Origin: Octopus sinensis
Lineage: Eukaryota
Length of the DNA stretch: 64,000 bases
Assembly (NCBI RefSeq): GCF_006345805.1
Contig: NC_043003.1
Span: 85,250,001 to 85,314,000, forward strand
Direction of reading: 5' to 3'
The notes beneath the pieces were generated by a model. That model saw only the letters and a program-made list of their open reading frames with translations, ran no database searches and was not told where the DNA came from. How positions within the stretch are numbered: the stretch's first letter is position 1; each line of letters opens with the position of its first letter. Made by a program: the position numbers and the translations under genes. Of the stretch, positions 2,261 to 62,872 are shown piece after piece.

Positions 2261-3286
2261 TTAATCTTTAAGTTCTGGTTTTGATATAACAGAAATTCGA
2301 ACCGGTTTTTGCTTGTCCAAACACTCTGGCACTGAAGAATTAAGCGGATAATGGCGATGTGACAAAGTGAGATCATCTGCCGCGGCCACAGTATTTCGAC
2401 AAAAAAATCCGCGAATCGTGTACTTGTATTGTGAATTGCCGTATGCATATAAACAAGGGTTTATAAACGAATTTGCGTGACTGAGAAGAATAGCGGCAAG
2501 TAAAACATTATGCGGTAGTAAGATTTCGGTTCCTTTCAGCAACATAATGCAATTTGATATGTGAATGGGGAACCAGCAAACGACAAATAAGCAAATTATT
2601 ATCACGAGGCTTTTGGCTGCTTTTATTTCTTTATATAGTTTTCTTCGAGCAAATTTTTTTCTGCTGTCACCGCCAACATTGGGCTGCATCGCTGATATTT
2701 GTTTTAGTTGCGCCATGACTATTTTAAAGATGTGTACATAGATCACTAACATGACAATCAACGGGAATAAAACACAGCCCAAAAAGTTGAAATAGACCAT
2801 ATACTGTAAGTCAATGACGCTCATGAAGCTGCAAAATTTTTCCTCGGACGGTCCCATGTTCCATCCCATGATTGGCACGAGTCCAATAATCAAAGCTACA
2901 GTCCAGCTTATGACAACCAGCATGAGAGAAAATTTAATTGTGAAATATTTTTCATATGTAAAGGGATAGTTAATGGCAACAAAGCGATCTATTGCGATGA
3001 CAAGAAGTCCATTTATGGAACATTGAGTCAGCAAAACAATACAGGAGTTGACGAGTACACAACCACTGAAATGATGTGGTAAGCCTTTAAAACTGAGAAC
3101 TGCCAGTGGTGCCGCCAGAAATCCTACAAGTAAATCAGCAACAGCAAGACTTCCAATAAAGCAGTTAGTTGTGGTCTGTAGCTTTTGATTGCGACGAATT
3201 GCTAACAATACGAGAAAGTTACCAACTATAGACATTACAGCAATTACTGTTTCACATGTTATGTATATTATAGAGCCAGTGTCCAT
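2261..3286 (-). CDS. AdoR: Adenosine receptor-like class A GPCR (341 aa, intronless CDS)
   Basis: Seven hydrophobic helices with adenosine-receptor motifs: TM1 YITCE, TM2 SLAVAD, TM3 LTQCS..DRF, ECL2 CSF, TM5 YMVYFNF, TM6 KEIKAAKSL..CWFPIHISNC, TM7 LSHANSFINPCLY. Good Kozak context (ATAATGG). Uninterrupted ORF. Confidence 0.95.
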   Translation of the reverse strand: MDTGSIIYITCETVIAVMSIVGNFLVLLAIRRNQKLQTTTNCFIGSLAVADLLVGFLAAPLAVLSFKGLPHHFSGCVLVNSCIVLLTQCSINGLLVIAIDRFVAINYPFTYEKYFTIKFSLMLVVISWTVALIIGLVPIMGWNMGPSEEKFCSFMSVIDLQYMVYFNFLGCVLFPLIVMLVIYVHIFKIVMAQLKQISAMQPNVGGDSRKKFARRKLYKEIKAAKSLVIIICLFVVCWFPIHISNCIMLLKGTEILLPHNVLLAAILLSHANSFINPCLYAYGNSQYKYTIRGFFCRNTVAAADDLTLSHRHYPLNSSVPECLDKQKPVRISVISKPELKD

Positions 3287-9724: not shown

Positions 9725-10698
9725 CGTGGGAGAGTCAAAATTATACGCACTCTTGTTTTTTCAATGTATTTACACGAAAGCAGAAGATAGACAAGAACGT
9801 CATTTTTCGATGCACTTGGTCCAGCAGTCCCCAAGCTAGCATATTTTCTCCAAGAAGTTTTTTGGTTGGTCGTGCAACCATTTATGCACCACTTCCTCCA
9901 CATCTTCATCTGTAGGAAGTCGACAACCTCGTAAACTATCTTTGAGCAATCCAAAGATATGATAGTCGGAAGGGGCGAGATCTGAGCTGAAGGCAGGGTG
10001 TTCCAGCACCTCAAAACTTTCTTCGATAATAGGTACTTGGTGCGAATAGCTGGCCTCAGTTTGTTGTATCTTGCACTAATGATCGTACACCCATTTTCCA
10101 GGTAGTCATCTAGTATAGGCCTTTTTGAGTCCTAAAAAAGGTTTGGCATTACCTTTCCTGTGGAAGACTGAGTCTTTAATTTCTTCGTCGTTTCCATTCC
10201 TTACGCTGTGTTTTGGATTCTACCTCATAATAATGAACCCACGTTTTATTTCCTGTGACCATTCTGCTCAAAAATTCCTCGCCCTCATTGTTGAAGCGAT
10301 CGAATAAACGTTGGCAGACCTCAATATATTTGCGCTTGTGCTCTGCAGTAAGCTTTCTTGGCACCCGTCTTACACAGATATATATGGATGATTTGAAAGG
10401 CAGAACAATGACTAATCTGCAGAGAACGAGCTACATCATCGATGATAACTCGGCGGTTCAGCATTATCATCTCTCGAGCTTGCTGAATTTTCTCATCAGT
10501 GGTGGAGTTTGACGGGTGTCCTACTCCCTCTTCGTACATCACGCTTCTCTGAGCACTTTTAAATTTCTCGATCCACTCATACACACTTCTACGCAGTAAT
10601 CCACGGTAGGCGACCAGGGTTGTTGAGTGTGCGAATACGAATACAAGAGTTACGGAATGGAGTATGTAAGTTCTTGCATACTCCATTCTGTAACTCAT
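9725..10698 (-). mobile_element. Degenerate mariner transposon
   Basis: Frameshifted transposase pieces: HTH (EWIEKFKS..GHPSNST), VPRKLT, MVTGNKTWVHYY and a degraded YSPDLAP-like region. TA+CGTGGGAGAGTCAAAATT TIR-like end at 9723-9745. Confidence 0.88.
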
Positions 10699-15835: not shown

Positions 15836-16660
15836 AAGCAGAATCGTTAGCATGCTGAGTGAAATGCTTAGCGGCGAGCTGGCAGAAACGTTAGCACGCC
15901 GGGCGAAATGCTTAGCCGTATTTCGTCTGCGTTACGTTGTGAGTTCAAATTCCGCCGAGGTCGACTTTGCCTTTCATCCTTTCGGGGTCGATAAATTAAG
16001 TACCAGTTACGCACTGGGGTCGATGTAATCGACTTAATACCTATGTATGTCCTTGTTTGTCCCCTCTGTGTTTAGCCCTTTGTGGGTAATAAAGAAATAG
16101 GTATTTCGTCTGTCGCTACGTTCTGAGCTTAAATTCCGCCGAGGTCGACTTGGCCTTTCATCCTTTCGGGGTCGATAAATTAAGTACCAGTTACGCACTG
16201 GGGTCGATATAATCGACTTAATCCGTTTGTCTATCCTTGTTTGTCCTCTCTCTCTCTGTTTAGCCCCTTGTGGGTAGTAAAGAAATAGGAATATCGTCTG
16301 TCGCTACGTTCTGAGTTTAAATTCTGCCGAGGTCGATTTTGCCTTTCCTCTTTTCGGGGTCGATAAATTAAGTACCAATGAAACACTGGAATCGATGTAA
16401 CCAACTTGTCCCCACCTTAAAAATGGCTGCCCTTCTGACAAAATTTGAAAACATTATTAAGTCGAAGTTGTAAGGCGGGAAGCTGGCAGAACCGTTAGCA
16501 CGACCGCAAAATGCTTAGCAACATTTCGCCTCTCTTTACATTTTGAGTTCAAATTCCGGTGAGGGCGACTTTGCCCTTCATCCTTTCGAGGTCGACAAAA
16601 TAAGTACTAGTCGAGTACTAGGGTCTATGTAATCAACTAGCCCTCCTCACACACACACAC
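15836..16660 (+). mobile_element. Concatemer of tRNA-SINEs with a Meta/MESC-like central domain
   Basis: Head GGCGAGCTGGCAGAAACGTTAGCACGCCGGGCG, then GAGTTCAAATTCCGCCGAGGTCGACTTTGCCTTTCATCCTTTCGGGGTCGATAAATTAAGTACC repeated with 183-188-bp period. Domain name recalled from memory. Confidence 0.85.
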
Positions 16661-17550
16661 ACACACAAACTTCAGGGCTTGAGCTTGTAGTAGAAAGGAT
16701 TATAAATTGTAGTTGATTATTGGTGTGCTAGTCATTGAAGCACCCACAATACGAAGTTCGAGGAAGTATGCTGATGTGTGGATTACTACTTTGGAGGATT
16801 GGAACACACCAACATTGAGGTAAATAGGTCTTTTAGTTATATAAAGATGTTTAGCTCCCTGTAGTGAAGATCAGTTATATTTTTTTACTAATTTCAGTTT
16901 TTGGGGTGCGATCAATGTCGGTAACCACTTCAAAGATTTTAGTCGATCATATTTTACTATTACTACTACTTATTTTAGTCCAGCACTTATTTTAAAGGTG
17001 TCTGTTTGCCGAAAGGCTAAGTTACAAGTTTCATATACAGGATGAGTAAGCGTTGATTTACAACAATAAACATAAACACTGACACAATCACATCACACAC
17101 ACACACACACACACACAAACTTCAGGGCTTGAGCTTGTAGTAGAAAGGATTATAAATTGTAGTTGATTATTGGTGTGCTAGTCATTGAAGCACCCACAAT
17201 ACGAAGTTCGAGGAAGTATGCTGATGTGTGGATTACTACTTTGGAGGATTGGAACACACCAACATTGAGGTAAATAGGTCTTTTAGTTATATAAAGATGT
17301 TTAGCTCCCTGTAGTGAAGATCAGTTATATTTTTTTACTAATTTCAGTTTTTGGGGTGCGATCAATGTCGGTAACCACTTCAAAGATTTTAGTCGATCAT
17401 ATTTTACTATTACTACTACTTATTTTAGTCCAGCACTTATTTTAAAGGTGTCTGTTTGCCGAAAGGCTAAGTTACAAGTTTCATATACAGGATGAGTAAG
17501 CGTTGATTTACAACAATAAACATAAACACTGACACAATCACATCACACAC
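16650..17550. repeat. Exact 450-bp tandem duplication bounded by (CA)n
   Basis: TTCAGGGCTT at 16671 and 17121; CATAAACACT at 17071 and 17521; no differences found by eye. Confidence 0.95.
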
Positions 17551-18974: not shown

Positions 18975-19650
18975 AAAAACAAAAATTGCTATGTACCGAG
19001 CATGTGTATTGACGTCGCCCCTTTACTCATGTGAGACATGGACCCATTACAAACGTCATGTAAGGATCCTTGAACGCTTTCATCAGAGATGTCTCAGACA
19101 TATTCTGAATGTTCGCTGGAACTTAAAAACTCCAGACACACAGGTGCTGAGGACAGCTGATATCTTGAGTATTGAGGCGATGGTGCACAAGCACCTATTA
19201 CGTTGGACTGGACACCTTATAAGAATGAAGGATAGCAGGATCCCTAAGCAGATGCTATACGGGGAACTTTTGAATGGAAAGAGACCCCAGCGGAAACCAA
19301 GGCTGCGATTTAAGGACTGTGTCAAGTCCTCATTAAAGGCCTGTGATATGCAGGAGACTAACTGAGAGAGCAATGCCTGTCATCGCCACAGATGGAGAAA
19401 GCAGGTTAAGGAGGGGGTCGGCACTTTTGAGAGAGCACGTAATCTGTATGAAGAACTTAAGCGTGCTGTTCGAAAGCGCGCTGCTGGTGTAGTGAATGGG
19501 GTAAGGTTGGTTAGCAATGTTTGCAGTCGTGTATGTTTCTCAAGAGCAGGGCTCATTAGCCACCAAACGCAAAATATAAGTTAGTCCTAAGGCGCACAAT
19601 GTTCCTGAAGATCAGTAATGATCTTCCTCGATCATGAGTGAACGGCCATC

Positions 19651-23656: not shown

Positions 23657-24893
23657 TTGGGTTGGCAACTAAGTTCCCGCTGTTTTTTTAATTTAAATTT
23701 TTTAAAAGGTTTAATAAAAAAAATAACAACTAATTAATCAATAATGTATTCACCCTTATTGTTTACAACTTCTTCCCAACGTTCAACAAGATTTTCAATA
23801 CCACGTTGGTAGAAATCACCCGATTTTGACTCGAAAATTGATCCAACTAAGCTCGCAATTCTGCATCAGTATTGCACGAACCTCCGTGCATAGCATTTGA
23901 AAGAGATCGAAAGAGATGGAAATCCGTTGGTGCCAAATCAAGAGAGTACGGCGGGTGTGGCAGCACTTCCCAGCCATGCCTTTGAATGGCTTCCTTGGTC
24001 ATATTGCGATATGAGGGCGGCCGTTGTCGTGCAGCAGAAAAGCTCCATGCTGCCGATTAGGTCTTTTCTCTTGAATAGCCGTGTTGAGTCGTTCCATCTG
24101 TTGAACATAGAGTTCCGCGTTGACCATTTGGTTCCGTTCAAGCAATTCGTAGTGGATAATCCCTTCCCAGCCCCACCATCGTTTTACGCGGATGAAGATC
24201 TTCTTTCACGCGCGGTTTCGCTTGTTTACCGGAGCTAAGCCATTCCTTACGCTGCTTCATATTGATGTACAGGCACCATTTTTCGTCGCCAGTAACGATT
24301 CGGTAAAGAAATCATTGCTGTGTCCATGAGTTGAGCGGTGATGAGCAAGCAAACCAGCAGAAATTGTGGCTCGTTGATTTTTCTTGTTGTCACTTAAAGC
24401 ATGCAAAACCCATGCGCCATACTTCTGAAACTTGCCCCACGTATGAAGATGCTTCTCTATAACAGTGTGGGAGCATTCCATTTTCTCTGCCAGTTCCCTT
24501 GTCGTTTGACGAGAATTTTCGTGCAAAAGTTGGTTTAATCGCTCTTCATCGAAATCAACTGGACGGCCAGAATGAGATGCGTCTATGATGTCAAAATTTC
24601 CATTTTTGAACTTGGCATACCAATCACAAGCGGTTTTTTCAGCTATGGCACCCTCTCCATACACAGCACAAATGTCGTGAGCATCTTTTGCGGCCCTAGA
24701 ACCTTGATTAAAAGCAAAAAGAAGGAAGTGTCGAAAATGCTCGTTTTTCTTAGCTTGACATTCCATTTTAATAAACAAAAATTAGAGAAAAAAACAAAAG
24801 AGATTTCAAAATGATTCAAAAATGGAATTCTCGAAACAAAAAATAGATTCCAAAATTTAAAAAAAAACGGCGGGAATTTAGTTGCCAGCCTAA
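23657..24893 (-). mobile_element. Full-length but frameshifted mariner (DD34D)
   Basis: TIRs TTGGGTTGGCAACTAAGTTCCCGC / GCGGGAATTTAGTTGCCAGCCTAA with TA TSDs; N-terminal HTH ORF 24257-24778 containing WVLHAL (WVPHxL-like); 1237 bp. Confidence 0.95.
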
Positions 24894-27509: not shown

Positions 27510-29215
27510 AAAAAGCAGAGGGAGAATTACGGATGTCTTACCTGTCTACCTGGAAGGGGGCCACTCACAACATTCACATGGTCTGTCTACCGCCGAACCG
27601 TCAACCACGTCTCCCCTTGTACGCTGTGAAGCTGAGAACTTCCCGCTCAGCTGAGAACTGCCCCACGCAGCCGTTCCGGTGGTACCCGCAGGCCCCACTT
27701 CCAACAGGACCGCGCACCCCCTCACTTCCGGTCCTTGCCTCCAATACATCCTGGCTCATAACGCCACAAGCCCCCTTGATCTGAAGATCATTCAACCAAT
27801 CCGCCCACACCCTCTCCTCCAACCAGATCGCACATCTTAACTTGTCTCGTAATCAGCCAACCAGTGAGGAGGGCGCCGCTCCCTCTGCGATAGCCATGAA
27901 ACTTCAGGACTGACCTCAGTCACTGGCATGTTGCTGCCGTCTTCATCCTCTTGTTCATTGCTACTGGCTCCATCTTTCAACGCATTGATGATCCTGCGCA
28001 CGTCCAAAACATTTCGTTGCATTCCATCTACGGACACATTACACCTCGAATTTACAGAGGTTATTATCCCCTTCGTCCATTGTGATGTGCACCGCGCATT
28101 TGGGGATTTAACCCAAACTTCTTCCCCGACCTGCACAAAGGCATGCTCTTTCTCTTCCGCGGGTTGTGGTGATGCAGTACATGGATGTCTCCACTCGTAC
28201 TTGAATATTATTCTGTGTAGCATTGACTACTCAGCCTGTCCCGAGCTGGGGGACATATTGTACCAGAAATCGGCCTCGATCGGTGAGATGTGACCCCTCT
28301 CTGCCATGGTCTTAATGGTACGATGATGCCTCTCCACAACCCCATTGCCACTTTGCCAGTATGCTGCCCCGAAGAAGCGGTTAACATGCCACTTGTCGAG
28401 CATTTCTCTCAGCACCTCCGAGCGAAACGCAATGCCACTGTCCACAAGCAGTTCATAGAACGGAGCCTCGTTCTACGAATATCTTATTTAGTATTCGTGT
28501 GATTTCCTCCGTAGTTCTCGTCTTCACCTCCTTCCATATGGTCATCCGAACCGGTCTGCAGTCGACCATCGAGAGATATGTCCCCTGTCGGTAGTGCGTC
28601 ACGTCCACTGCCAGTCGTTTCCAGTTGTGTTCCACTGAAATACTTCCTGCCTCATGCACACCCGGAGCGGGGTCAATGGACTGGCACCTGTCGCAGCTTC
28701 CAACCACTTTCTGCACATTCTGCCAGGTCACGTCAGAGTCAATTTTCCTGGCTAGGAACAGGGTCCTGTCTACCTCCATGTGATGCATGGTATGCAGTCT
28801 CCCCAGCTCCGAGTCACTCAGTCGACACACTGCAGCCACTCCTTGCTCCGGATCCTCCGGAACCTGCAACAAAGCTTTGCTTACTCTGGTCAGGACGTCT
28901 GCTCTGTTCTTCACAGAGGGCACAAAAACCACACGTCTCTTCTCGTACGCTGACGAGATGGGAACTGCCCACTCACGCGTTGCAGACGCACATACCCACC
29001 GCAGCCGTTCCGTTGGCATTCGCCGGCCCCACTTCCGACAGGACCTGCGCACTCCCTCACTTCCGGTCCTTACCTCCAATATAGCCTGGCTCACAACACT
29101 ACACGACCATAAAGTTGCAATGTTCATACATTTCTCGAAAGCAATACTGACATAATCGAAACCGTATTGCAGACTAAATTCCCTTAAGTCTTTCCTCCGC
29201 TTGTTACACAAGAAA
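27510..29215 (-). mobile_element. Internally deleted Gypsy-like LTR retrotransposon
   Basis: End of RNase H (VPSVKNRADVLTR), integrase HHCC (H..H..CDRC), LAVD, DSG..F and GNGVVERHH across frameshifts. Diverged direct repeats at ~27620-27770 and ~28930-29100. Confidence 0.9.
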
Positions 29216-34961: not shown

Positions 34962-35043
34962 CCTTCTATAAAATAAATTAATTTACTCTGCTATGTATTG
35001 AGTACCTTATTTACTGTGGTTAACCCCGACTCAACCCGGGACC

Positions 35044-35104
<61 letters not shown>

Positions 35105-35120
35105 ATATATATAGATACAT

Positions 35121-35164
<44 letters not shown>

Positions 35165-35347
35165 TAATAATAATAATAATAATAATATGAGGGAATATTA
35201 TTCCAAACTTACATATATATATATATATATATATCACGTGATCACGTGACCGACCAGACCATCAGATGTTTTACACATCGCTGGTCACAATGCGTTCGCA
35301 TTGTTTTAGCCTTCGAATGACGCCACCCCGCTGGCTAAGCGAGCAAG

Positions 35348-35384
<37 letters not shown>

Positions 35385-35390
<6 letters not shown>

Positions 35391-35575
35391 TAACGGGAAG
35401 GTTTACGAAAATAAACAAAAGACGAAGGCAGTTGGAGTACAAACAAACAAATGTATTAGTATGGCGCTTAGGAATAGAAATAGAACAAGTCTTTTACTCT
35501 TCGACAGAAAGATACACAGAAAAAAAAAACAAGGAGAGAAAAAAATGCGTGTAGGAGCTAACGATTTATCATGGT
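35385..35575 (-). mobile_element. Penelope-like terminal fragment (family of 53927-54062)
   Basis: Reverse complement shares GTCTTCGTCTTTTGTTT and TTTCTGT(C/T)GAAGAG..TAAAAGACTT with the 53.95-kb copy. Confidence 0.5.
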
Positions 35576-35839
35576 GATATATATATAACGCCACAACGCC
35601 AAAATAAAGAACTATATTTCATTAAAAAATTTAGACCAAGTTTAAACACCCTGGGCCAGGAATACTAAAACAAAAGATAAGTCCTCCGAAAAGGAGAACC
35701 AAATTTCACCACGGCCGCTACTTCAAACAGACACTCACTCTGACGGAAATATGCCTTAGTAAAAAAGGAAAAAAAAATTCTTTTCGTGCAAATCTGACCC
35801 TGATACATACGATACAGCTAAGGGTCAGACCCGATTCTG

Positions 35840-36300
35840 ATTGGTCAACAAGTTGATGACGTCTAGCTCTGCTAGAATGGACAGGATACAAACAGGGGAC
35901 AGTCATTAGAGAATATTGATGACGTCCTTTTCTGCTTGAATAGTCACTTAACAAGTACAGACAGGGGGCAGATCTAATGTAGCTATAAGTCGTGATTGGG
36001 CAGAATCTGGATGACGTCCCGCTCTGCTTGACTAACGAAGCGACTGGTCAAAACAGGAAACAAACAAGAGGCAGATATAATGCAGCGATTGGTCAAAATA
36101 ATGATGACGTCCCGTTCTACTTGACTAACGAAGCGACTGGTCAAAACAGGAAACAAACAAGAGGGAGTATAATGCAGCGATTGGTCAAAATAATGATGAC
36201 GTCCCGTTCTACTTGATTAAAGCCACCTAACGAAACGATTGGTCAAAACATTGATGACGTCACGCTACGCTAGATTGACCACCTAACAGGCATTATAAAA
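35840..36300 (+). promoter_or_regulatory. Array of CCAAT(ATTGG)+CRE(TGACGTC) modules followed by TATA box
   Basis: ATTGG-N12-TGACGTC at 35840, 35995, 36088, 36180 and 36238; ATTAG variant at 35905; TATAAAA at 36294-36300. Confidence 0.7.
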
Positions 36301-36637
36301 CCGAGCATTTCACAAAAACTCACTAGAACCACCCAGCGAACTTCCACCATGGGTCATCACAATTGCTTACGGTAAAAATGAATTCCTCGCTCTTTCGGAA
36401 ACATCAATCTTCTGTATTGACCGCTTTCCACCACTTTGATCTGTTTTTTGTATTGAATACGTATCGCCACCGTGGGCCACTGCATCGAACACTTTGAACA
36501 TATACTTCAAACTATATATCAACTATACATGAACTATATATCAACTATACATGAACTCTAAGATGTCTGACTCCGTTGTGTATTATAAATGATTTCTTGT
36601 GTTTGACGGCATGAGCTGTCTTTTTTATATATAATTT

Positions 36638-36670
36638 TTGATAAGGTTCATTCAGGAACTGAAACATGTT
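36638..36670 (+). ncRNA. Hammerhead-like motif with U3/A8 core
   Basis: TTGATAA-GGTTC(attcag)GAACT-GAAA-CATGT-T; stem I weak. Confidence 0.4.
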
Positions 36671-36735
36671 ATAATGTATACATAAAAATTAAAAATTGTA
36701 TAATACAGCAGCATTTTCGAACTTCATTTTTTACA

Positions 36736-36784
<49 letters not shown>

Positions 36785-36788
36785 ATAT

Positions 36789-36820
<32 letters not shown>

Positions 36821-37029
36821 CAAGAGAAAAGCATTACCATCGAAAAAAAGCATAGTCATATGAAGGAAATGATGGAAGGAAAAGTTTGATAGGGGAAAAG
36901 CTCCTCCTACGAGTAAATTACGATAAAATTTTTGTCCTTCCTAACTCAGAACATAAAGATGGACGAAATGCTGTTAAGCATTTTTTCCAGCGGGCTGACG
37001 ATTCTACCACTTCACCGCATGCAGTACCA

Positions 37030-37540
37030 GGCACTTGCTTTCACGGCTACTGATCTTAACTGATTGGAAGTGTTATCATGTACATTGTTTTGTCTTGGTA
37101 TAAAAGATGGGCTACAGCAAATATTCTGCTCAATACCACAGATTTGCTTGTCAGTTGCTTGACCTTAACCAATTGAGCATCTCCCTCGGTGGATGACAAT
37201 ATGTGCATCTCTGATCACGAGAAGGGATAGTGGGGGAGCATCATAGCTATATGTTGAGAGGAATTAGTTGAGGTTTGAATAATTCACCTTTGGAAACATG
37301 AGTGTTTCGATCAACATCCTTAAACAGACCTGATTTAGAGCGTGATGGGCTACTCGACCTGAAGAAAATTCTAACTGGGCCCCACCTGCAAGGTCATGCG
37401 CTGTTTATTTTAATATGAGATCCCCATGTCGTGCGCATATGGTTGTGATGCATGTGCCTGGTATACCTTATCAGACAGGTAGTCATGATGGGTATATTGA
37501 ACTTCGTATATTTTACCCCAGGGCCACTTTGATGTTATAC
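37030..37540 (-). mobile_element. SINE-associated repeat body
   Basis: Joined to a Meta-like SINE head at 36940-37030; family and strand not firmly assigned. Confidence 0.45.
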
Positions 37541-37914
37541 ACTGTTCTCTTACTCAATAATGATGATGGTGGTGGTGGTGGTGGTAATGATGAAGATTTG
37601 AAATTAAGGCACAAGGGGTAACATTTTCGGTGGAGGAGGTAAATCTATTACAAAGACTCTAGTGTTCGACTGGTACATATTTTATCGACCCCGAAAAGAT
37701 GAAAGGTAAAGTCGCTAAGAATTTTACCTGCTGTGCTAACGATTCTGCAAGCTGTTCTGTAAAGCTTGTACAGGACGTTTGCCATATTAGGGACAGGAAA
37801 GATTATCAGGAGGGTTCTTAGCACTTGAAAAACTATTGAAAGTTTGTGGATACTTAAGATTACAGGTAGTAACCCACTACCCACATAAATCCCACCAGAA
37901 ATAAGACTGAACCT

Positions 37915-39170
<1,256 letters not shown>

Positions 39171-44749: not shown

Positions 44750-45697
44750 TAGGGTGGGAAAGCAAAACTTGCATTAAAAGTTACACTGATATTTCATAGC
44801 AACCACTACCCCAAACTATATGAAACCTAATGCAGAACAAAGAGTGCGTAATCAGCTAATAATAAATTTTTTTTTTTTTTTGCAGGAATATTGGAGAATA
44901 TGATTTGGTCCCTACACAAGCCGATCCGAAGACGATCTTAAGCACAGACGGAGAATCCTTGGCAACAGTTTATAACGTGAAGAAGAGAATGGACATGGGC
45001 AACGGAATTTAGAGGATGTCTGGCAAGAGTGGGCCAACAAGAAGCGGAATGAAGACTTCATCAACACCCTCAAGTTCAAACTTTCAACGGACCCAACCAT
45101 ATCCATGAGGAAGCTGGCTTCTGAACTTGAGGTGAGCTCTAAGACCATCAAAACAGGACACCGAGACATCTGCTGAATGAACCTATGAAGGCCAGGAGAT
45201 TGAAGAGGTTGAAAAAGGTTCTTACATACCTCAAGAAGAACGAGTGCACAGTGAAAACTGTGTGGGCCCAGGATGGTGATCCCAGCCATACTGCCAATAA
45301 GGTACAGAATTACTACAAATCCAACTTTGCTGCTTTCTGGCCTGCGGACTTCTGGCCTTCTTCTAGCCCGGATCTCAACCCTCTGGACTATGTGTTGGAT
45401 ATTTTGGAGCATAGCATGCCACCAACAAAACCTCCCACCCCAACATCAATTCACTGAAGGCTGCCATCGATGAAGAGTAGGCCAGAATGTCCAGTGACTT
45501 CATGGGGAAGAGTTGAGCGGGGTTCTGGGGTCGTGTGGAGGCTGCAATTGCAAACAATGAGGGCTACATAGAATAAATTATTCGTTTTGTAATTATATGT
45601 TAATGTTAACCTATTTTTGAATTACTAAACCTATTAATGCGCAATGAGAGAGTTTCAAATGTTACAGCAATTTTGCAAGTTTGGCTTCCCCAGCCTG
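44750..45697 (+). mobile_element. DD37D (maT-like) transposon, deleted
   Basis: QDGDPSH..WPSSSPDLNPLD with 37 residues between the two Asp; TIR-like AGGGTGGGAAAGCAAAACTTGCA / TGCAAGTTTGGCTTCCCCAGCCTG. Confidence 0.85.
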
Positions 45698-60886: not shown

Positions 60887-60920
<34 letters not shown>

Positions 60921-60922
<2 letters not shown>

Positions 60923-61915
60923 ATGACGTCCCGTTCTACTTGACTAACGAAGCGACTAGTCAAAACAGGAAACAAACAAGAGGGAGTTGTAATGTAAAAA
61001 AGGAAAAAAATTCTTTCGTGCAAATCTGACCCTGATACATACGATACAGCTACGGGTCAGACCCGATTCTGATTGCTCAACAAGTTGATGACGTCTAGCT
61101 CTGCTAGAATGGACAGGATACAAACAGGGGAAAGTCATTAGTCAGAATATTGATGACGTCCTTTTCTGCTTGAATAGTCACTTAACAAGTACAGACAGGG
61201 GGCAGATCTAATGTAGCTATAAGTCGTGATTGGGCAGAATCTGGATGACGTCCCGCTCTGCTTGACTAACGAAGCGACTGGTCAAAACAGGAAACAAACA
61301 AGAGGCAGATATAATGCAGCGATTGGTCAAAATAATGATGACGTCCCGTTCTACTTGACTAACGAAGCGACTGGTCAAAACAGGAAACAAACAAGAGGGA
61401 GTTATAATGCAGCGATTGGTCAAAATAATGATGACGTCCCGTTCTACTTGATTAAAGCCACCTAACGAAACGATTGGTCAAAACATTGATGACGTCACGC
61501 TACGCTAGATTGACCACCTAACAGGCATTATAAAACCGAGCATTTCACAAAAACTCACTAGAACCACCCAGCGAACTTCCACCATGGGTCATCACAATTG
61601 CTTACGGTAAAAATGAATTCCTCGCTCTTTCGGAAACATCAATCTTCTGTATTGACCGCTTTCCACCACTTTGATCTGTTTTTTGTATTGAATACGTATC
61701 GCCACCGTGGGCCACTGCATCGAACACTTTGAACATATACTTCAAACTATATATCAACTATACATGAACTATATATCAACTATACATGAACTCTAAGATG
61801 TCTGACTCCGTTGTGTATTATAAATGAATTTCTTGTGTTTGACGGCATGAGCTGTCTTTTTTTATATATAACTTTTTTTGATAAGGTTCATTTCAGGAAC
61901 TGAAACATGTTACAA
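60921..61915 (+). mobile_element. Second copy of the Penelope-like pLTR (continues at 63973-64000)
   Basis: Near-identical to 35759-36674, with an extra partial module at its 5' side. Confidence 0.9.
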
Positions 61916-62424
61916 TCTCTTATTATAAAAGGCAGATTTTATCTGCCTCCCTTTGGGAGTTATACAAATCTACAATATAGGATTTCTTCAATTACAATTT
62001 ACCTAGCAATTTTAAGAGTACAATGCATCGCGTCATGCCAGGTCCAGTTTTTAAAATTTAAACTCCAATTAAGCAAAATTTACAGAAAACTCACATTCTG
62101 GTGTGTGTGTCAAATGCTTTTCTTAGTCTGGTTTACACCACACGCAAACGCACACACACAGTGGGCAACGAATAAAATGAAAGTAATTGACTTACTGTAG
62201 TGAGTGATTCTTTCACTCTGCCTCCCACTTCCTCTTTCCACACATAGACACGCAAATATATAAATAAAATTGTAAGCTAACGTGCGTGTGTGTGAGTGGG
62301 TGTGTGTGGGTGTGCGCGTGTGTGTGTGTGTGAGGGTGCGTGTGTGTGTGTGTGCGTGTGCGTGAGTGTGTGACAGGAAAGTTTTTTTACGACGAATATA
62401 ACACCTATATCCAAGTAGCAGAAA

Positions 62425-62797
62425 GATAAGACAGTAAGGTGTGATTTGAGGGAGATTTGGCTGCTATTTCTACCATGTCTAGCTGCCATGTAGAGGTCTC
62501 CCTCATAGGCTCATACATACATATATACATAGATAAGACAGTAAGGTGTGATTTGGGGGAAATTTGGCTGCTATTTCTACCAGGTCTAGCTGCCATGTAG
62601 GGGTCTCCCTCATAGGCTCATACATACATATATACATAGATAAGACAGTAAGGTGTGATTTGGGGGAAATTTGGCTGCTATTTCTACCAGGTCTAGCTAC
62701 CATGTAGAGGTCCCCCTCATTGGCTCATATATATATACATACATAAGACAGTAAGGTGTGATTTGAGGGAGATTTGGCTGCTGTTTCTACCAGGTCT
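62425..62797. repeat. ~107-bp minisatellite, ~3.5 units
   Basis: GATAAGACAGTAAGGTGTGATTTG at 62425, 62532 and 62639; variant near 62742. Confidence 0.92.
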
Positions 62798-62872
62798 GTT
62801 AGGTCTTCTCATGTAAACTCAAGCTTTCTCATGCCTTGAACATAAGACCAAAGCAGAGAATGTATTCTTTTA

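What the first reader, a model, noticed from the sequence alone, without database searches (positions are those of the whole stretch)
35840..36300. Retroelement promoter built from CCAAT+CRE modules with an invariant 12-bp spacer
Five modules keep exactly ATTGG-N12-TGACGTC although their spacers and flanks differ. The ATTAG module is N12 in the 61-kb copy and N10 here. The last module has a perfect TGACGTCA, about 30 bp before TATAAAA. Known: these are NF-Y and CREB/ATF motifs. Conserved spacing across diverged units suggests selection for a composite site. A dispersed cAMP-responsive cassette, here in two copies upstream of a GPCR type that commonly signals through cAMP, could rewire host genes.
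Basis: partly seen in the sequence, partly recalled or inferred. Interest (0 to 1): 0.7.

Follow-up and report, generated by a model that had tools for sequence, protein, structure and literature searches.

The report
Tandem CRE/CCAAT enhancer in octopus repeat
A 920-bp repeat present twice in this Octopus sinensis window carries six tandem copies of one small unit with a CRE-like site and an inverted CCAAT box ahead of a TATA box; the constant 12-bp gap is inherited from copying that unit and is not evidence of selection, so this is an ordinary LTR-style enhancer-promoter.

Summary
The motifs are there. ATTGG-N12-TGACGTC occurs five times at 35840-36262 and four times in a second copy at 61229-61497 (0.01 expected). 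The ATTAG module is N10 here and N12 at 61 kb. The last module is a full TGACGTCA, 31 bp before TATAAAA.

The modules are not independent. They are tandem paralogues of one unit and align without gaps over about 40 columns. A word with no assigned factor (CTTGA/CTAGA, 8 nt after the CRE) keeps its distance in 13 of 13 cases, better than ATTGG does. Only the CRE core is significantly conserved (7/7 invariant columns, p about 0.002-0.006). The CCAAT pentamer and the spacer are not.

Since the two copies diverged, 2 of 12 differences fall in modules, which is the neutral share.

The carrier is a ~920-bp repeat, with two copies 25.2 kb apart at 98.3% identity. Its layout looks like an LTR: enhancer repeats, TATA, and TGTAA...TTACA ends in one copy. 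It has no target-site duplication, no primer-binding site and no gag/pol between the copies, so "retroelement" is plausible but unproven.

The GPCR (adenosine-A2b-like, 2261-3286, minus strand) lies 32.5 and 57.7 kb away on the opposite strand, so the rewiring idea has no support. Other genomic copies could not be retrieved.

The parts
35759..36675 (+). Copy 1 of the ~920-bp LTR-like repeat. By its terminal words it spans 35758-36673, reading AGTAA...TTATA.
   Evidence: Self-BLAST: 35759-36675 matches 60994-61916 at 98.3% over 926 columns, same orientation. The flanks are unrelated.
60993..61916 (+). Copy 2 of the repeat. Its terminal words are TGTAA (60993) and TTACA (61910-61914), a 5-nt inverted terminal repeat.
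   Evidence: It differs from copy 1 by 4 substitutions and 8 indel events.
35840..35863 (+). Module 1: ATTGG-N12-TGACGTC. The pentamer sits in the NF-Y-favoured context CTGATTGG. The matching module in copy 2 (61072-61095) reads ATTGC.
35905..35926 (+). Module 2: ATTAG-N10-TGACGTC. It is N12 in copy 2 at 61137-61160.
35995..36018 (+). Module 3: ATTGG-N12-TGACGTC (copy 2: 61229-61252).
36088..36111 (+). Module 4: ATTGG-N12-TGACGTC (copy 2: 61322-61345). It lies in the 93-bp tandem array.
36180..36203 (+). Module 5: ATTGG-N12-TGACGTC, with a spacer identical to module 4 (copy 2: 61415-61438).
36238..36262 (+). Module 6: ATTGG-N12-TGACGTCA, the only full palindromic CRE (copy 2: 61473-61497).
36010..36220 (+). 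Tandem array, period 93 bp, 2.3 copies, 95% matches. Each unit also holds an 'ACTGG' half-unit (36041, 36134) that has no CRE.
   Evidence: TRF.
36294..36300 (+). TATAAAA box (copy 2: 61529-61535). An initiator-like TCACT lies at 36320-36324, 28 nt downstream. Treating it as the start site is an inference.
   Evidence: Read from the sequence.
36301..36675 (+). Post-TATA part, R/U5-like. It has no AATAAA but has TATAAA at 36584 followed by a GT-rich stretch. It also has a 22-bp tandem repeat at 36510-36557, and an ATG in CCACCATGG at 36349 that opens only an 8-codon frame.
60917..60992 (+). 78-bp fragment of a repeat unit directly 5' of copy 2. It has a CRE at 60924-60930 and a purine-rich tract ending 6 nt before copy 2, and is cut off upstream by (TA)n. 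Its origin is unexplained.
   Evidence: No matching remainder exists elsewhere in the window.
2261..3286 (-). Neighbour, not part of the element: an intronless rhodopsin-family GPCR. NCBI names its O. bimaculoides cluster partner 'adenosine receptor A2b-like'.
   Evidence: Pfam 7tm_1 E = 2.6e-50; cluster look-up; locus on O. sinensis CM016865.1.

Best explanation
The cassette is the enhancer-promoter (U3-like) part of a ~920-bp dispersed, LTR-like repeat in the Octopus sinensis genome. The two copies are most likely solo or orphaned LTRs of an LTR retroelement. One short ancestral unit carried an inverted CCAAT box and, 12 bp on, a CRE-like bZIP site. Tandem duplication copied it to six units upstream of a TATA box, with spacings of 63-65, 92, 93, 92-93 and 58 bp. 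Retroviral and ERV U3 enhancers commonly grow the same way. The constant ATTGG-to-TGACGTC distance is inherited from that unit. It is part of a block of about 40 bp that has taken substitutions but no indels. In the active element, a CREB/ATF-type bZIP factor on the invariant GATGACGTC core, probably helped by NF-Y on the CCAAT boxes, would recruit RNA polymerase II to start about 28 nt after the TATA box and transcribe rightwards. The two copies seen here are decaying neutrally. Shown: the motifs, the duplication history, CRE conservation, the copy structure. Inferred: LTR identity, factor binding, the start site, any activity. Sub-confidences: spacing inherited by duplication 0.9; Pol II promoter/enhancer using bZIP with or without NF-Y 0.55; LTR of a retroelement 0.5.
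For: The units are homologous and gap-free from about -3 to +37 relative to the pentamer. There is a 93-bp tandem array. TGACGTC-N8-CTTGA/CTAGA holds in 13/13 CREs. CRE columns are 7/7 invariant against 10-12 of 29 for spacer plus flank, p = 0.002-0.006, including when only four diverged lineages are used. GATGACGTC is invariant in all six units. Two same-orientation copies are 98.3% identical with sharp ends and unrelated flanks. Copy 2 has TGTAA...TTACA termini. TATAAAA lies 31 bp after the last, fully palindromic CRE. TATAAA plus a GT-rich stretch lies about 290 nt further on. Module changes since the copies split are 2 of 12 differences, against 16% of the length. Literature: LTRs are the commonest class of NF-Y site in human, and ERV-9/LTR12 has CCAAT-bearing U3 tandem repeats (PMC3730095). 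Deltaretroviral LTRs use three CRE-containing 21-bp repeats (PMC12957037, PMC506788). NF-Y interacts with bZIP factors ATF2, ATF3, ATF6 and c-Jun (PMC4889920).
Against: LTR hallmarks tested here failed. There is no 4-6-bp target-site duplication around either copy, and only a 4-mer with a 2-nt offset for the pair. No TGG-type primer-binding site follows copy 1. No gag/pol lies in the 24.3 kb between the copies. Copy 1 lacks the TG/CA dinucleotides. There is no canonical AATAAA. Two 99.6% (substitutions only) identical copies 25 kb apart are awkward for independent insertions of a rare family, and 84 kb of other O. sinensis DNA held none. No other genomic copy, no transcript and no binding data could be obtained. 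The sample is effectively 4-5 diverged units from a single lineage.
Confidence: 0.55

Rival explanations
1. One reading: ATTGG-N12-TGACGTC is a composite NF-Y/bZIP site whose geometry is held by selection, so that the two factors bind cooperatively. The element spreads a cAMP-responsive cassette.
For: No indel falls in any of the six paralogous spacers of copy 2, while unit lengths vary from 58 to 93 bp. Several pentamers have NF-Y-favourable flanks, judged from my own knowledge of the NF-Y consensus and not tested. One unrelated animal contig (L001, 3144-3169) has the same ATTGG-N12-TGACGTCA, followed by CCAAT and a TATA-like box. Fixed NF-Y-to-partner spacing has precedents: MHC-II X2/Y with CREB (PMC4381081), NF-Y/ATF6 in ER-stress elements, and E-box at 10-12 bp (PMC3730095, PMC4889920).
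Against: The gap-free block runs well past both motifs, and an unassigned word keeps its distance better (13/13). The spacer is no more conserved than the flank, and CCAAT is not significantly conserved. At the rough indel rate seen outside the core (at least 3 events in about 50 columns), a 12-column spacer stays indel-free about half the time (my estimate). 'ACTGG' half-units lack a CRE. One copy has already changed a spacer length and the other a pentamer. The L001 hit is a single case, and a 22-base word in a very large collection may match by chance. Only module 6 is a full CRE.
Confidence: 0.2
2. It is not a retroelement. The 920-bp unit is another kind of dispersed or locally duplicated DNA, such as a DNA-level duplication, a templated repair insertion, or an unclassified non-autonomous element carrying a minisatellite. 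The factor-site words are then incidental or belong to an unannotated host promoter.
For: No target-site duplication, no primer-binding site, no coding interior. Two copies sit close together, yet none occurs in 84 kb elsewhere. LTR elements are a minor repeat class in octopus (PMC8967140).
Against: Only 920 bp is shared, with sharp ends and unrelated flanks, which suits a mobile unit better than a segmental duplication. There are TGT...ACA-type termini in copy 2, an enhancer-repeats/TATA/downstream layout, and a purine-rich tract directly 5' of copy 2. There are no long terminal inverted repeats, no hammerhead ribozyme or small-RNA-like part and no tRNA-like part, so the tested non-LTR classes do not fit either.
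Confidence: 0.25
3. The two copies are the 5' and 3' LTRs of one very large (26-kb) non-autonomous or heavily invaded element.
For: Same orientation and near-identity, as expected for an LTR pair. A purine-rich, PPT-like tract ends 6 nt before copy 2. A weak CTTA/CTTA match lies at the outer flanks.
Against: The 4-mer needs a 2-nt offset, and about 0.3 such matches are expected from the 243 combinations tried. No primer-binding site follows copy 1. The interior has no gag/pol but holds old SINE-like repeats (about 80-90% alike), long microsatellites and a DDE-transposase remnant. Such a load is hard to fit into an element whose LTRs differ by 0.4% in substitutions.
Confidence: 0.1

Closest known systems
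ERV-9 / LTR12 U3 enhancer (human endogenous retrovirus LTR with tandem CCAAT-bearing repeats bound by NF-Y)
   Same: The U3-type region is built from tandem copies of a short unit that carries a CCAAT box, upstream of the LTR's own promoter. Copies are scattered in the genome as mostly solo LTRs (PMC3730095).
   Different: LTR12 units are shorter and pair CCAAT with GATA-type motifs, not with a CRE. NF-Y binding is shown there by ChIP, whereas nothing is shown here. The host is a mollusc, and LTR identity is unproven here.
Deltaretrovirus LTR CRE repeats (three 21-bp repeats of the HTLV-1 and BLV LTRs)
   Same: Several imperfect CRE-like sites are repeated in U3 and act as the main enhancer through CREB/ATF factors (PMC12957037, PMC506788).
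   Different: Those repeats depend on a viral transactivator and have no adjoining CCAAT box. Here there are six units, no viral genes and no evidence of activity.
MHC class II X2-Y module (CREB plus NF-Y with fixed, helically phased spacing)
   Same: A CRE-like site and an inverted CCAAT (Y box, ATTGG) sit a constant distance apart. There, spacing but not spacer sequence is conserved across mammals (PMC4381081).
   Different: There the CRE lies 5' of ATTGG, an RFX (X1) box is obligatory, and conservation is seen across independent orthologous lineages. Here the order is ATTGG then CRE, no X1 box was looked for or seen, and all units descend from one duplicated block.
ER-stress response elements (ERSE: NF-Y plus ATF6 at a strict spacing)
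   Same: NF-Y and a bZIP factor sit on neighbouring sites whose distance matters (cited in PMC3730095 as Yoshida et al. 2000).
   Different: From my own knowledge, ERSE is CCAAT-N9-CCACG and ERSE-II is ATTGG-N1-CCACG. Here the spacer is 12 and the bZIP word is TGACGTC, so the defining pattern is not met.

Membership tests
LTR of an LTR retrotransposon / endogenous retrovirus | Two direct repeats in the same orientation, near-identical | tested here: met
   35759-36675 against 60994-61916, 98.3% identical, both on the + strand.
LTR of an LTR retrotransposon / endogenous retrovirus | TG...CA termini with a short inverted terminal repeat | tested here: inconclusive
   Copy 2 reads TGTAA...TTACA. 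Copy 1 reads AGTAA...TTATA.
LTR of an LTR retrotransposon / endogenous retrovirus | 4-6-bp target-site duplication | tested here: not met
   None around either copy at any boundary offset within 4 nt. For the pair, only a CTTA 4-mer with a 2-nt offset, which is within chance.
LTR of an LTR retrotransposon / endogenous retrovirus | Primer-binding site after the 5' LTR and polypurine tract before the 3' LTR | tested here: inconclusive
   No TGG-type site follows 36675. A purine-rich tract ends 6 nt before copy 2, but it belongs to a fragment of the U3 repeat unit.
LTR of an LTR retrotransposon / endogenous retrovirus | gag/pol interior between the LTRs | tested here: not met
   No ORF of 100 aa or more resembles gag/pol. 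Octopus pol probes hit only 27.8-29.2 kb (-) and weakly 54.1 kb (-). Pfam on the ten longest open stretches gives only a weak DDE_3 match.
LTR of an LTR retrotransposon / endogenous retrovirus | U3-R-U5 layout: enhancer, TATA, poly(A) signal | tested here: inconclusive
   Enhancer repeats and TATAAAA are present. There is no AATAAA or ATTAAA inside the repeat, only the variant TATAAA at 36584.
LTR of an LTR retrotransposon / endogenous retrovirus | Many dispersed genomic copies, some full-length | not testable with these tools
   No tool searches the octopus genome by DNA. ORF-based look-ups and scans found no other copy.
Spacing-constrained NF-Y/bZIP composite element (MHC-II X2-Y, ERSE type) | Distance conserved while the spacer sequence drifts, in independent lineages | tested here: inconclusive
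   Only paralogous units of one array are available. Spacer identity is 0.73, and the spacer is not distinguishable from the flank. A control word keeps its distance 13/13.
Spacing-constrained NF-Y/bZIP composite element (MHC-II X2-Y, ERSE type) | The published patterns themselves (CCAAT-N9-CCACG; ATTGG-N1-CCACG; X1-X2-Y order) | tested here: not met
   The pattern here is ATTGG-N12-TGACGTC, with the CRE 3' of ATTGG.
Spacing-constrained NF-Y/bZIP composite element (MHC-II X2-Y, ERSE type) | Cooperative binding of the two factors | not testable with these tools
   No binding data are available.
Penelope-like element pseudo-LTR | Hammerhead ribozyme motif in the repeat | tested here: not met
   Rfam scan of 35000-39000 at E up to 1 gave no hammerhead, and nothing came near a gathering score.
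SINE or small-RNA-derived LTR (Cassandra type) | tRNA-, 5S- or other small-RNA-like segment | tested here: not met
   No Rfam match. No tRNA gene in 30-64 kb.
DNA transposon / MITE | Terminal inverted repeats of 10 nt or more, plus a target-site duplication | tested here: not met
   Only the 5-nt TGTAA/TTACA repeat is at the termini. No target-site duplication.

The most novel reading that the evidence does not exclude
The repeat belongs to a young octopus LTR family whose enhancer is a true NF-Y/CREB composite with a preferred 12-bp geometry. That geometry is also used by host promoters in molluscs (the single L001 instance would be one). The family would then scatter signal- or activity-responsive promoters through the genome of an animal with a large nervous system.
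Probability: 0.08. Interest if true: 0.55.

Novelty: new member of a known kind. Interest (0 to 1): 0.22.

Why it matters
As it stands, this is a textbook pattern. A repeat with a U3-like enhancer made of tandem copies of a factor-binding unit is how many retroviral and ERV promoters are built, and CRE and CCAAT sites are among the commonest parts. The main value of the check is methodological. Constant spacing among tandem paralogues cannot be read as selection without a control, and here a neighbouring word with no assigned factor passes the same test better. If a genome-wide census later showed a large, expressed family with a constrained geometry, it would give a first described cis-regulatory grammar for a cephalopod mobile element. 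It would also point to a possible source of CRE-bearing promoters near host genes. Nothing in this window shows that.

Tried and rejected
(1) Finding other copies through ORFs that read across the repeat. Nine such ORFs are absent from the 15-billion-protein collection, and a homology search with the 79-aa ORF spanning modules 3-5 found nothing.

(2) Exact-word scans. Three scans of viral contigs gave 0 hits. The metagenome-contig scan gave one hit, L001, which shares only a single 26-nt module and no other similarity.

(3) Fishing for the parent element through octopus pol proteins. The pol-like remnant at 27.8-29.2 kb (-) belongs to an old family at 60-65% identity. Three of its loci plus the GPCR locus (84 kb) contain no trace of the repeat. 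I stopped because the chance of hitting the right family was small.

(4) One-element hypothesis: rejected as the leading reading for lack of interior, primer-binding site and target-site duplication.

(5) Nested-insertion explanation for the 78-bp fragment: no matching remainder lies 3' of copy 2 or anywhere in the window.

(6) CpG content as a sign of youth or hypomethylation: 0.96-0.98 against a background median of 0.80 and 95th percentile of 1.22, so uninformative.

(7) Penelope-like, SINE/Cassandra-like, MITE and Helitron-like readings. No ribozyme, small-RNA part or long terminal inverted repeats were found. The Helitron-type end words (5' TC, 3' CTRR) are absent by reading of the ends.

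It was replaced by stop-free stretches.

Full report
**Source and setting.** The window is Octopus sinensis assembly GCA_006345805.1, chromosome CM016865.1, starting at about 85,240,001. This was fixed through the one clear gene, an intronless rhodopsin-family GPCR at 2261-3286 on the minus strand (Pfam 7tm_1, E = 2.6e-50). Its exact protein lies on that 117.5-Mb record. NCBI names its 90%-identity cluster partner in O. bimaculoides 'adenosine receptor A2b-like'. The rest of the window is AT-rich (30-46% GC). It is full of microsatellites, SINE-like repeats and transposon remnants.

**Checking the observation.** ATTGG-N12-TGACGTC occurs nine times, all on the + strand: at 35840, 35995, 36088, 36180 and 36238, and again at 61229, 61322, 61415 and 61473. 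Dinucleotide-preserving shuffles expect 0.01. No other spacing from 0 to 40 occurs anywhere in the window, and there are no matches on the minus strand. Between modules 1 and 3 lies an ATTAG module, which is N10 at 35905-35926 and N12 at 61137-61160. The last module ends in a full TGACGTCA (36255-36262), 31 bp before TATAAAA at 36294-36300. Outside the two copies and an adjacent fragment, the remaining 62 kb holds a single TGACGTC/GACGTCA. The description is therefore accurate, with three additions:
- The first module of the 61-kb copy reads ATTGC.
- Units 4 and 5 have identical spacers.
- A seventh CRE sits in a 78-bp unit fragment at 60917-60992.

**What the modules are.** Tandem Repeats Finder reports a 93-bp period, 2.3 copies at 95% matches, over 36010-36220. 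Aligning the six units of copy 2 shows that they are paralogues of one ancestral unit. From about 3 nt before the pentamer to 37 nt after its first base, all six align without a gap, at 66-98% pairwise identity. Successive CREs lie 63-65, 92, 93, 92-93 and 58 bp apart, so the length differences fall between the cores. The nine pattern matches thus reflect about four or five diverged lineages of a single block, seen twice. They are not five independent solutions to one constraint.

**Is the 12-bp distance informative?** Four tests say it is not.
- *A control word.* Eight nucleotides after every CRE lies CTTGA or CTAGA. This holds for 13 of 13 CREs, including the ATTAG and ATTGC modules and the orphan fragment. 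ATTGG-N12 holds for 9 of 12 full modules. A word with no assigned factor therefore keeps its distance better than the CCAAT box does.
- *Conservation by segment.* Invariant columns across the six units are CRE 7/7, pentamer 3/5, spacer 5/12 and flank 5/17. The CRE is significantly more conserved than spacer plus flank (Fisher p = 0.002; p = 0.006 with only four clearly diverged units). The pentamer is not (p about 0.3-0.4). The spacer does not differ from the flank (p = 0.12-0.39). The two bases before the CRE are also invariant, so the conserved core is GATGACGTC.
- *Half-units.* Each 93-bp unit holds a second half-unit that begins CGACTGGTCAAAA. It shares 16 of the first 22 bases with the CCAAT half and then diverges completely, with no CRE. 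In the deeper history of the array the pairing was not always kept.
- *Changes since the copies split.* The two genomic copies differ by 4 substitutions and 8 indel events. Two of these 12 differences lie in modules, one in a pentamer in one copy and one changing a spacer length in the other. Modules make up 16% of the repeat. That is the neutral share, so nothing protects the geometry at these loci.

As a rough estimate of my own, at the indel rate seen outside the core (at least 3 events in about 50 columns) a 12-column stretch stays indel-free about half the time.

**What carries the modules.** A self-comparison shows two copies of a ~920-bp repeat, 35759-36675 and 60994-61916. They are in the same orientation and 98.3% identical, or 99.6% counting substitutions only. 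Their ends are sharp and their flanks are unrelated even at high sensitivity. The layout looks like an LTR:
- about 535 bp holding the six units;
- a TATA box, with an initiator-like TCACT 28 nt downstream;
- then about 375 bp containing TATAAA at 36584 followed by a GT-rich stretch.

Copy 2 begins TGTAA and ends TTACA, whereas copy 1 reads AGTAA and TTATA.

The harder hallmarks fail:
- There is no 4-6-bp target-site duplication around either copy at any boundary offset within 4 nt. For the pair there is only a 4-mer with a 2-nt offset, within chance for the 243 combinations tried.
- No primer-binding site follows copy 1.
- No gag/pol is detectable in the 24.3 kb between the copies. No ORF of 100 aa or more looks like it. 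Octopus pol probes hit only a remnant at 27.8-29.2 kb on the other strand, plus one marginal hit at 54.1 kb. Pfam on the ten longest open stretches gives only a weak DDE_3 transposase match at 45143-45454.

Other classes fit no better. There is no hammerhead ribozyme or small-RNA-like part, no tRNA-like part and no long terminal inverted repeats. I therefore treat 'LTR of a retroelement' as the leading reading on architecture alone, at about even odds.

**The fragment beside copy 2.** Directly 5' of copy 2 lies a 78-bp piece 95% identical to the unit. It ends in a purine-rich tract 6 nt before the repeat and is cut off upstream by a (TA)n run. It could be the last interior bases of a lost element (a polypurine tract), the remains of an older copy, or a longer form of the repeat. 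No matching remainder exists in the window. It stays unexplained.

**Attempts to reach other copies.** I tried four indirect routes:
- ORFs that read through the repeat: not in the protein collection, and no homologues.
- Exact-word scans of viral contigs: three scans, nothing.
- An exact-word scan of metagenome contigs: one hit.
- Loci around octopus pol fragments: 84 kb, no trace of the repeat.

The one hit, L001 (JAAUYA010110332.1), is an animal contig with a C1q-domain exon. It carries a single, non-repeated ATTGG-N12-TGACGTCA, followed by a CCAAT and a TATA-like box. It shares nothing else with the window. It is a single case, and a 22-base word may match by chance in a collection of that size. 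I record it as a lead, not as evidence.

**How it most likely works.** The invariant GATGACGTC core repeated six times, the CCAAT boxes beside most of them, and the TATA box 31 bp after the only fully palindromic CRE together fit a Pol II enhancer-promoter. It would be driven by a CREB/ATF-type bZIP factor, with NF-Y as a likely helper, and would have expanded by tandem duplication. This is inference from sequence and from known systems:
- LTRs are the commonest class of NF-Y site in the human genome, and ERV-9/LTR12 has CCAAT-bearing U3 tandem repeats (PMC3730095).
- Deltaretroviral LTRs use three CRE-containing 21-bp repeats (PMC12957037, PMC506788).
- NF-Y interacts with several bZIP factors, and ATF1/3 peaks co-occur with CCAAT (PMC4889920).
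- Fixed NF-Y-to-partner spacing is known at MHC-II X2/Y with CREB (PMC4381081) and at NF-Y/ATF6 sites (cited in PMC3730095).

The published patterns are not met here: the order, distance and bZIP word all differ. The comparison is therefore 'works like', not 'is a member of'. A TGACGTC word does not by itself show cAMP responsiveness, because many bZIP factors bind such sites.

**The host-gene idea.** The GPCR start codon is 32.5 kb from copy 1 and 57.7 kb from copy 2. The receptor is on the minus strand and the cassette is on the plus strand, so the cassette points away from it. No gene was found downstream of either copy within the window. The co-occurrence of a CRE-bearing repeat with a receptor whose relative is named for a cAMP-coupled type rests on an annotation name. 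It has no support from position or orientation.

**Novelty and verdict.** The key inference, selection on spacing, does not survive a simple internal control. The object is an ordinary kind of thing, a repeat-borne tandem enhancer with CRE and CCAAT sites, in an organism where such elements have not been described in detail. LTR elements are a minor class in octopus, though Gypsy, BEL/Pao and Copia all occur in cephalopods (PMC8967140, PMC6238403). I rate it a new member of a known kind, of low to moderate interest. The open points are the class of the repeat and whether the 12-bp geometry recurs in independent lineages. Both can be settled by a genome-wide census and cross-species comparison.

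Noticed in passing
L001 3144-3169 (JAAUYA010110332.1): An unrelated animal contig with a C1q-domain exon at 1678-2091 carries a single ATTGG-N12-TGACGTCA. It matches module 6 of the window at 25 of 26 bases and is followed by a CCAAT about 50 bp on and a TATA-like box about 75 bp on. It may be an independent promoter with the same geometry, or a chance match.
   Followed up: partly
window 60917-60992: A 78-bp fragment of the repeat unit lies directly 5' of copy 2. It has a CRE but no pentamer, ends in a purine-rich tract, and is cut off by a (TA)n run. Its origin is unexplained, and no matching remainder exists in the window.
   Followed up: partly
window 35793-35829 (and the same place in copy 2): A perfect 9-bp inverted repeat, TCTGACCCT / AGGGTCAGA, with 19 nt between the arms, lies just upstream of module 1. 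The arms contain TGACCC/GGGTCA words that resemble nuclear-receptor half-sites.
   Followed up: no
window 36349-36375: An ATG in a strong context (CCACCATGG) 49 nt after the TATA box opens only an 8-codon frame. A splice-donor-like GGTAA at 36371 overlaps the stop codon. It is identical in both copies.
   Followed up: no
window 36510-36557: A perfect 22-bp tandem repeat (2.2 copies) lies in the post-TATA part of the repeat, in both copies.
   Followed up: no
window 27834-29211 (-): A fragmentary RNase H/integrase-like pol remnant is spread over more than one ORF. Its relatives are short 'uncharacterized' O. sinensis and O. bimaculoides proteins at 46-70% identity, so the family is old. It is not linked to the repeat studied here.
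   Followed up: partly
window 24257-24778 (-), 10321-10698 (-), 45143-45454 (+): DNA-transposon remnants: a Mos1-type HTH domain (E = 2.4e-17), a weak HTH_23 match and a weak DDE_3 match.
   Followed up: no
window 15.9-16.6, 22.4-22.8, 32.3-32.6, 37.6-38.7, 48.0-48.25 kb: An abundant SINE-like repeat family, with copies 78-91% alike on both strands. It includes three copies inside the interval between the two LTR-like repeats.
   Followed up: no
window 16648-16947 and 17098-17397; 62424-62847: An exact 300-nt direct repeat with 450-nt start-to-start spacing, and a 107-bp tandem repeat of four copies just downstream of copy 2.
   Followed up: no
window 18991-19365 (+): A 124-aa ORF that, on reading, resembles the C-terminal part of a non-LTR reverse transcriptase. 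Pfam gave no match at E up to 0.01, so this is unverified.
   Followed up: partly
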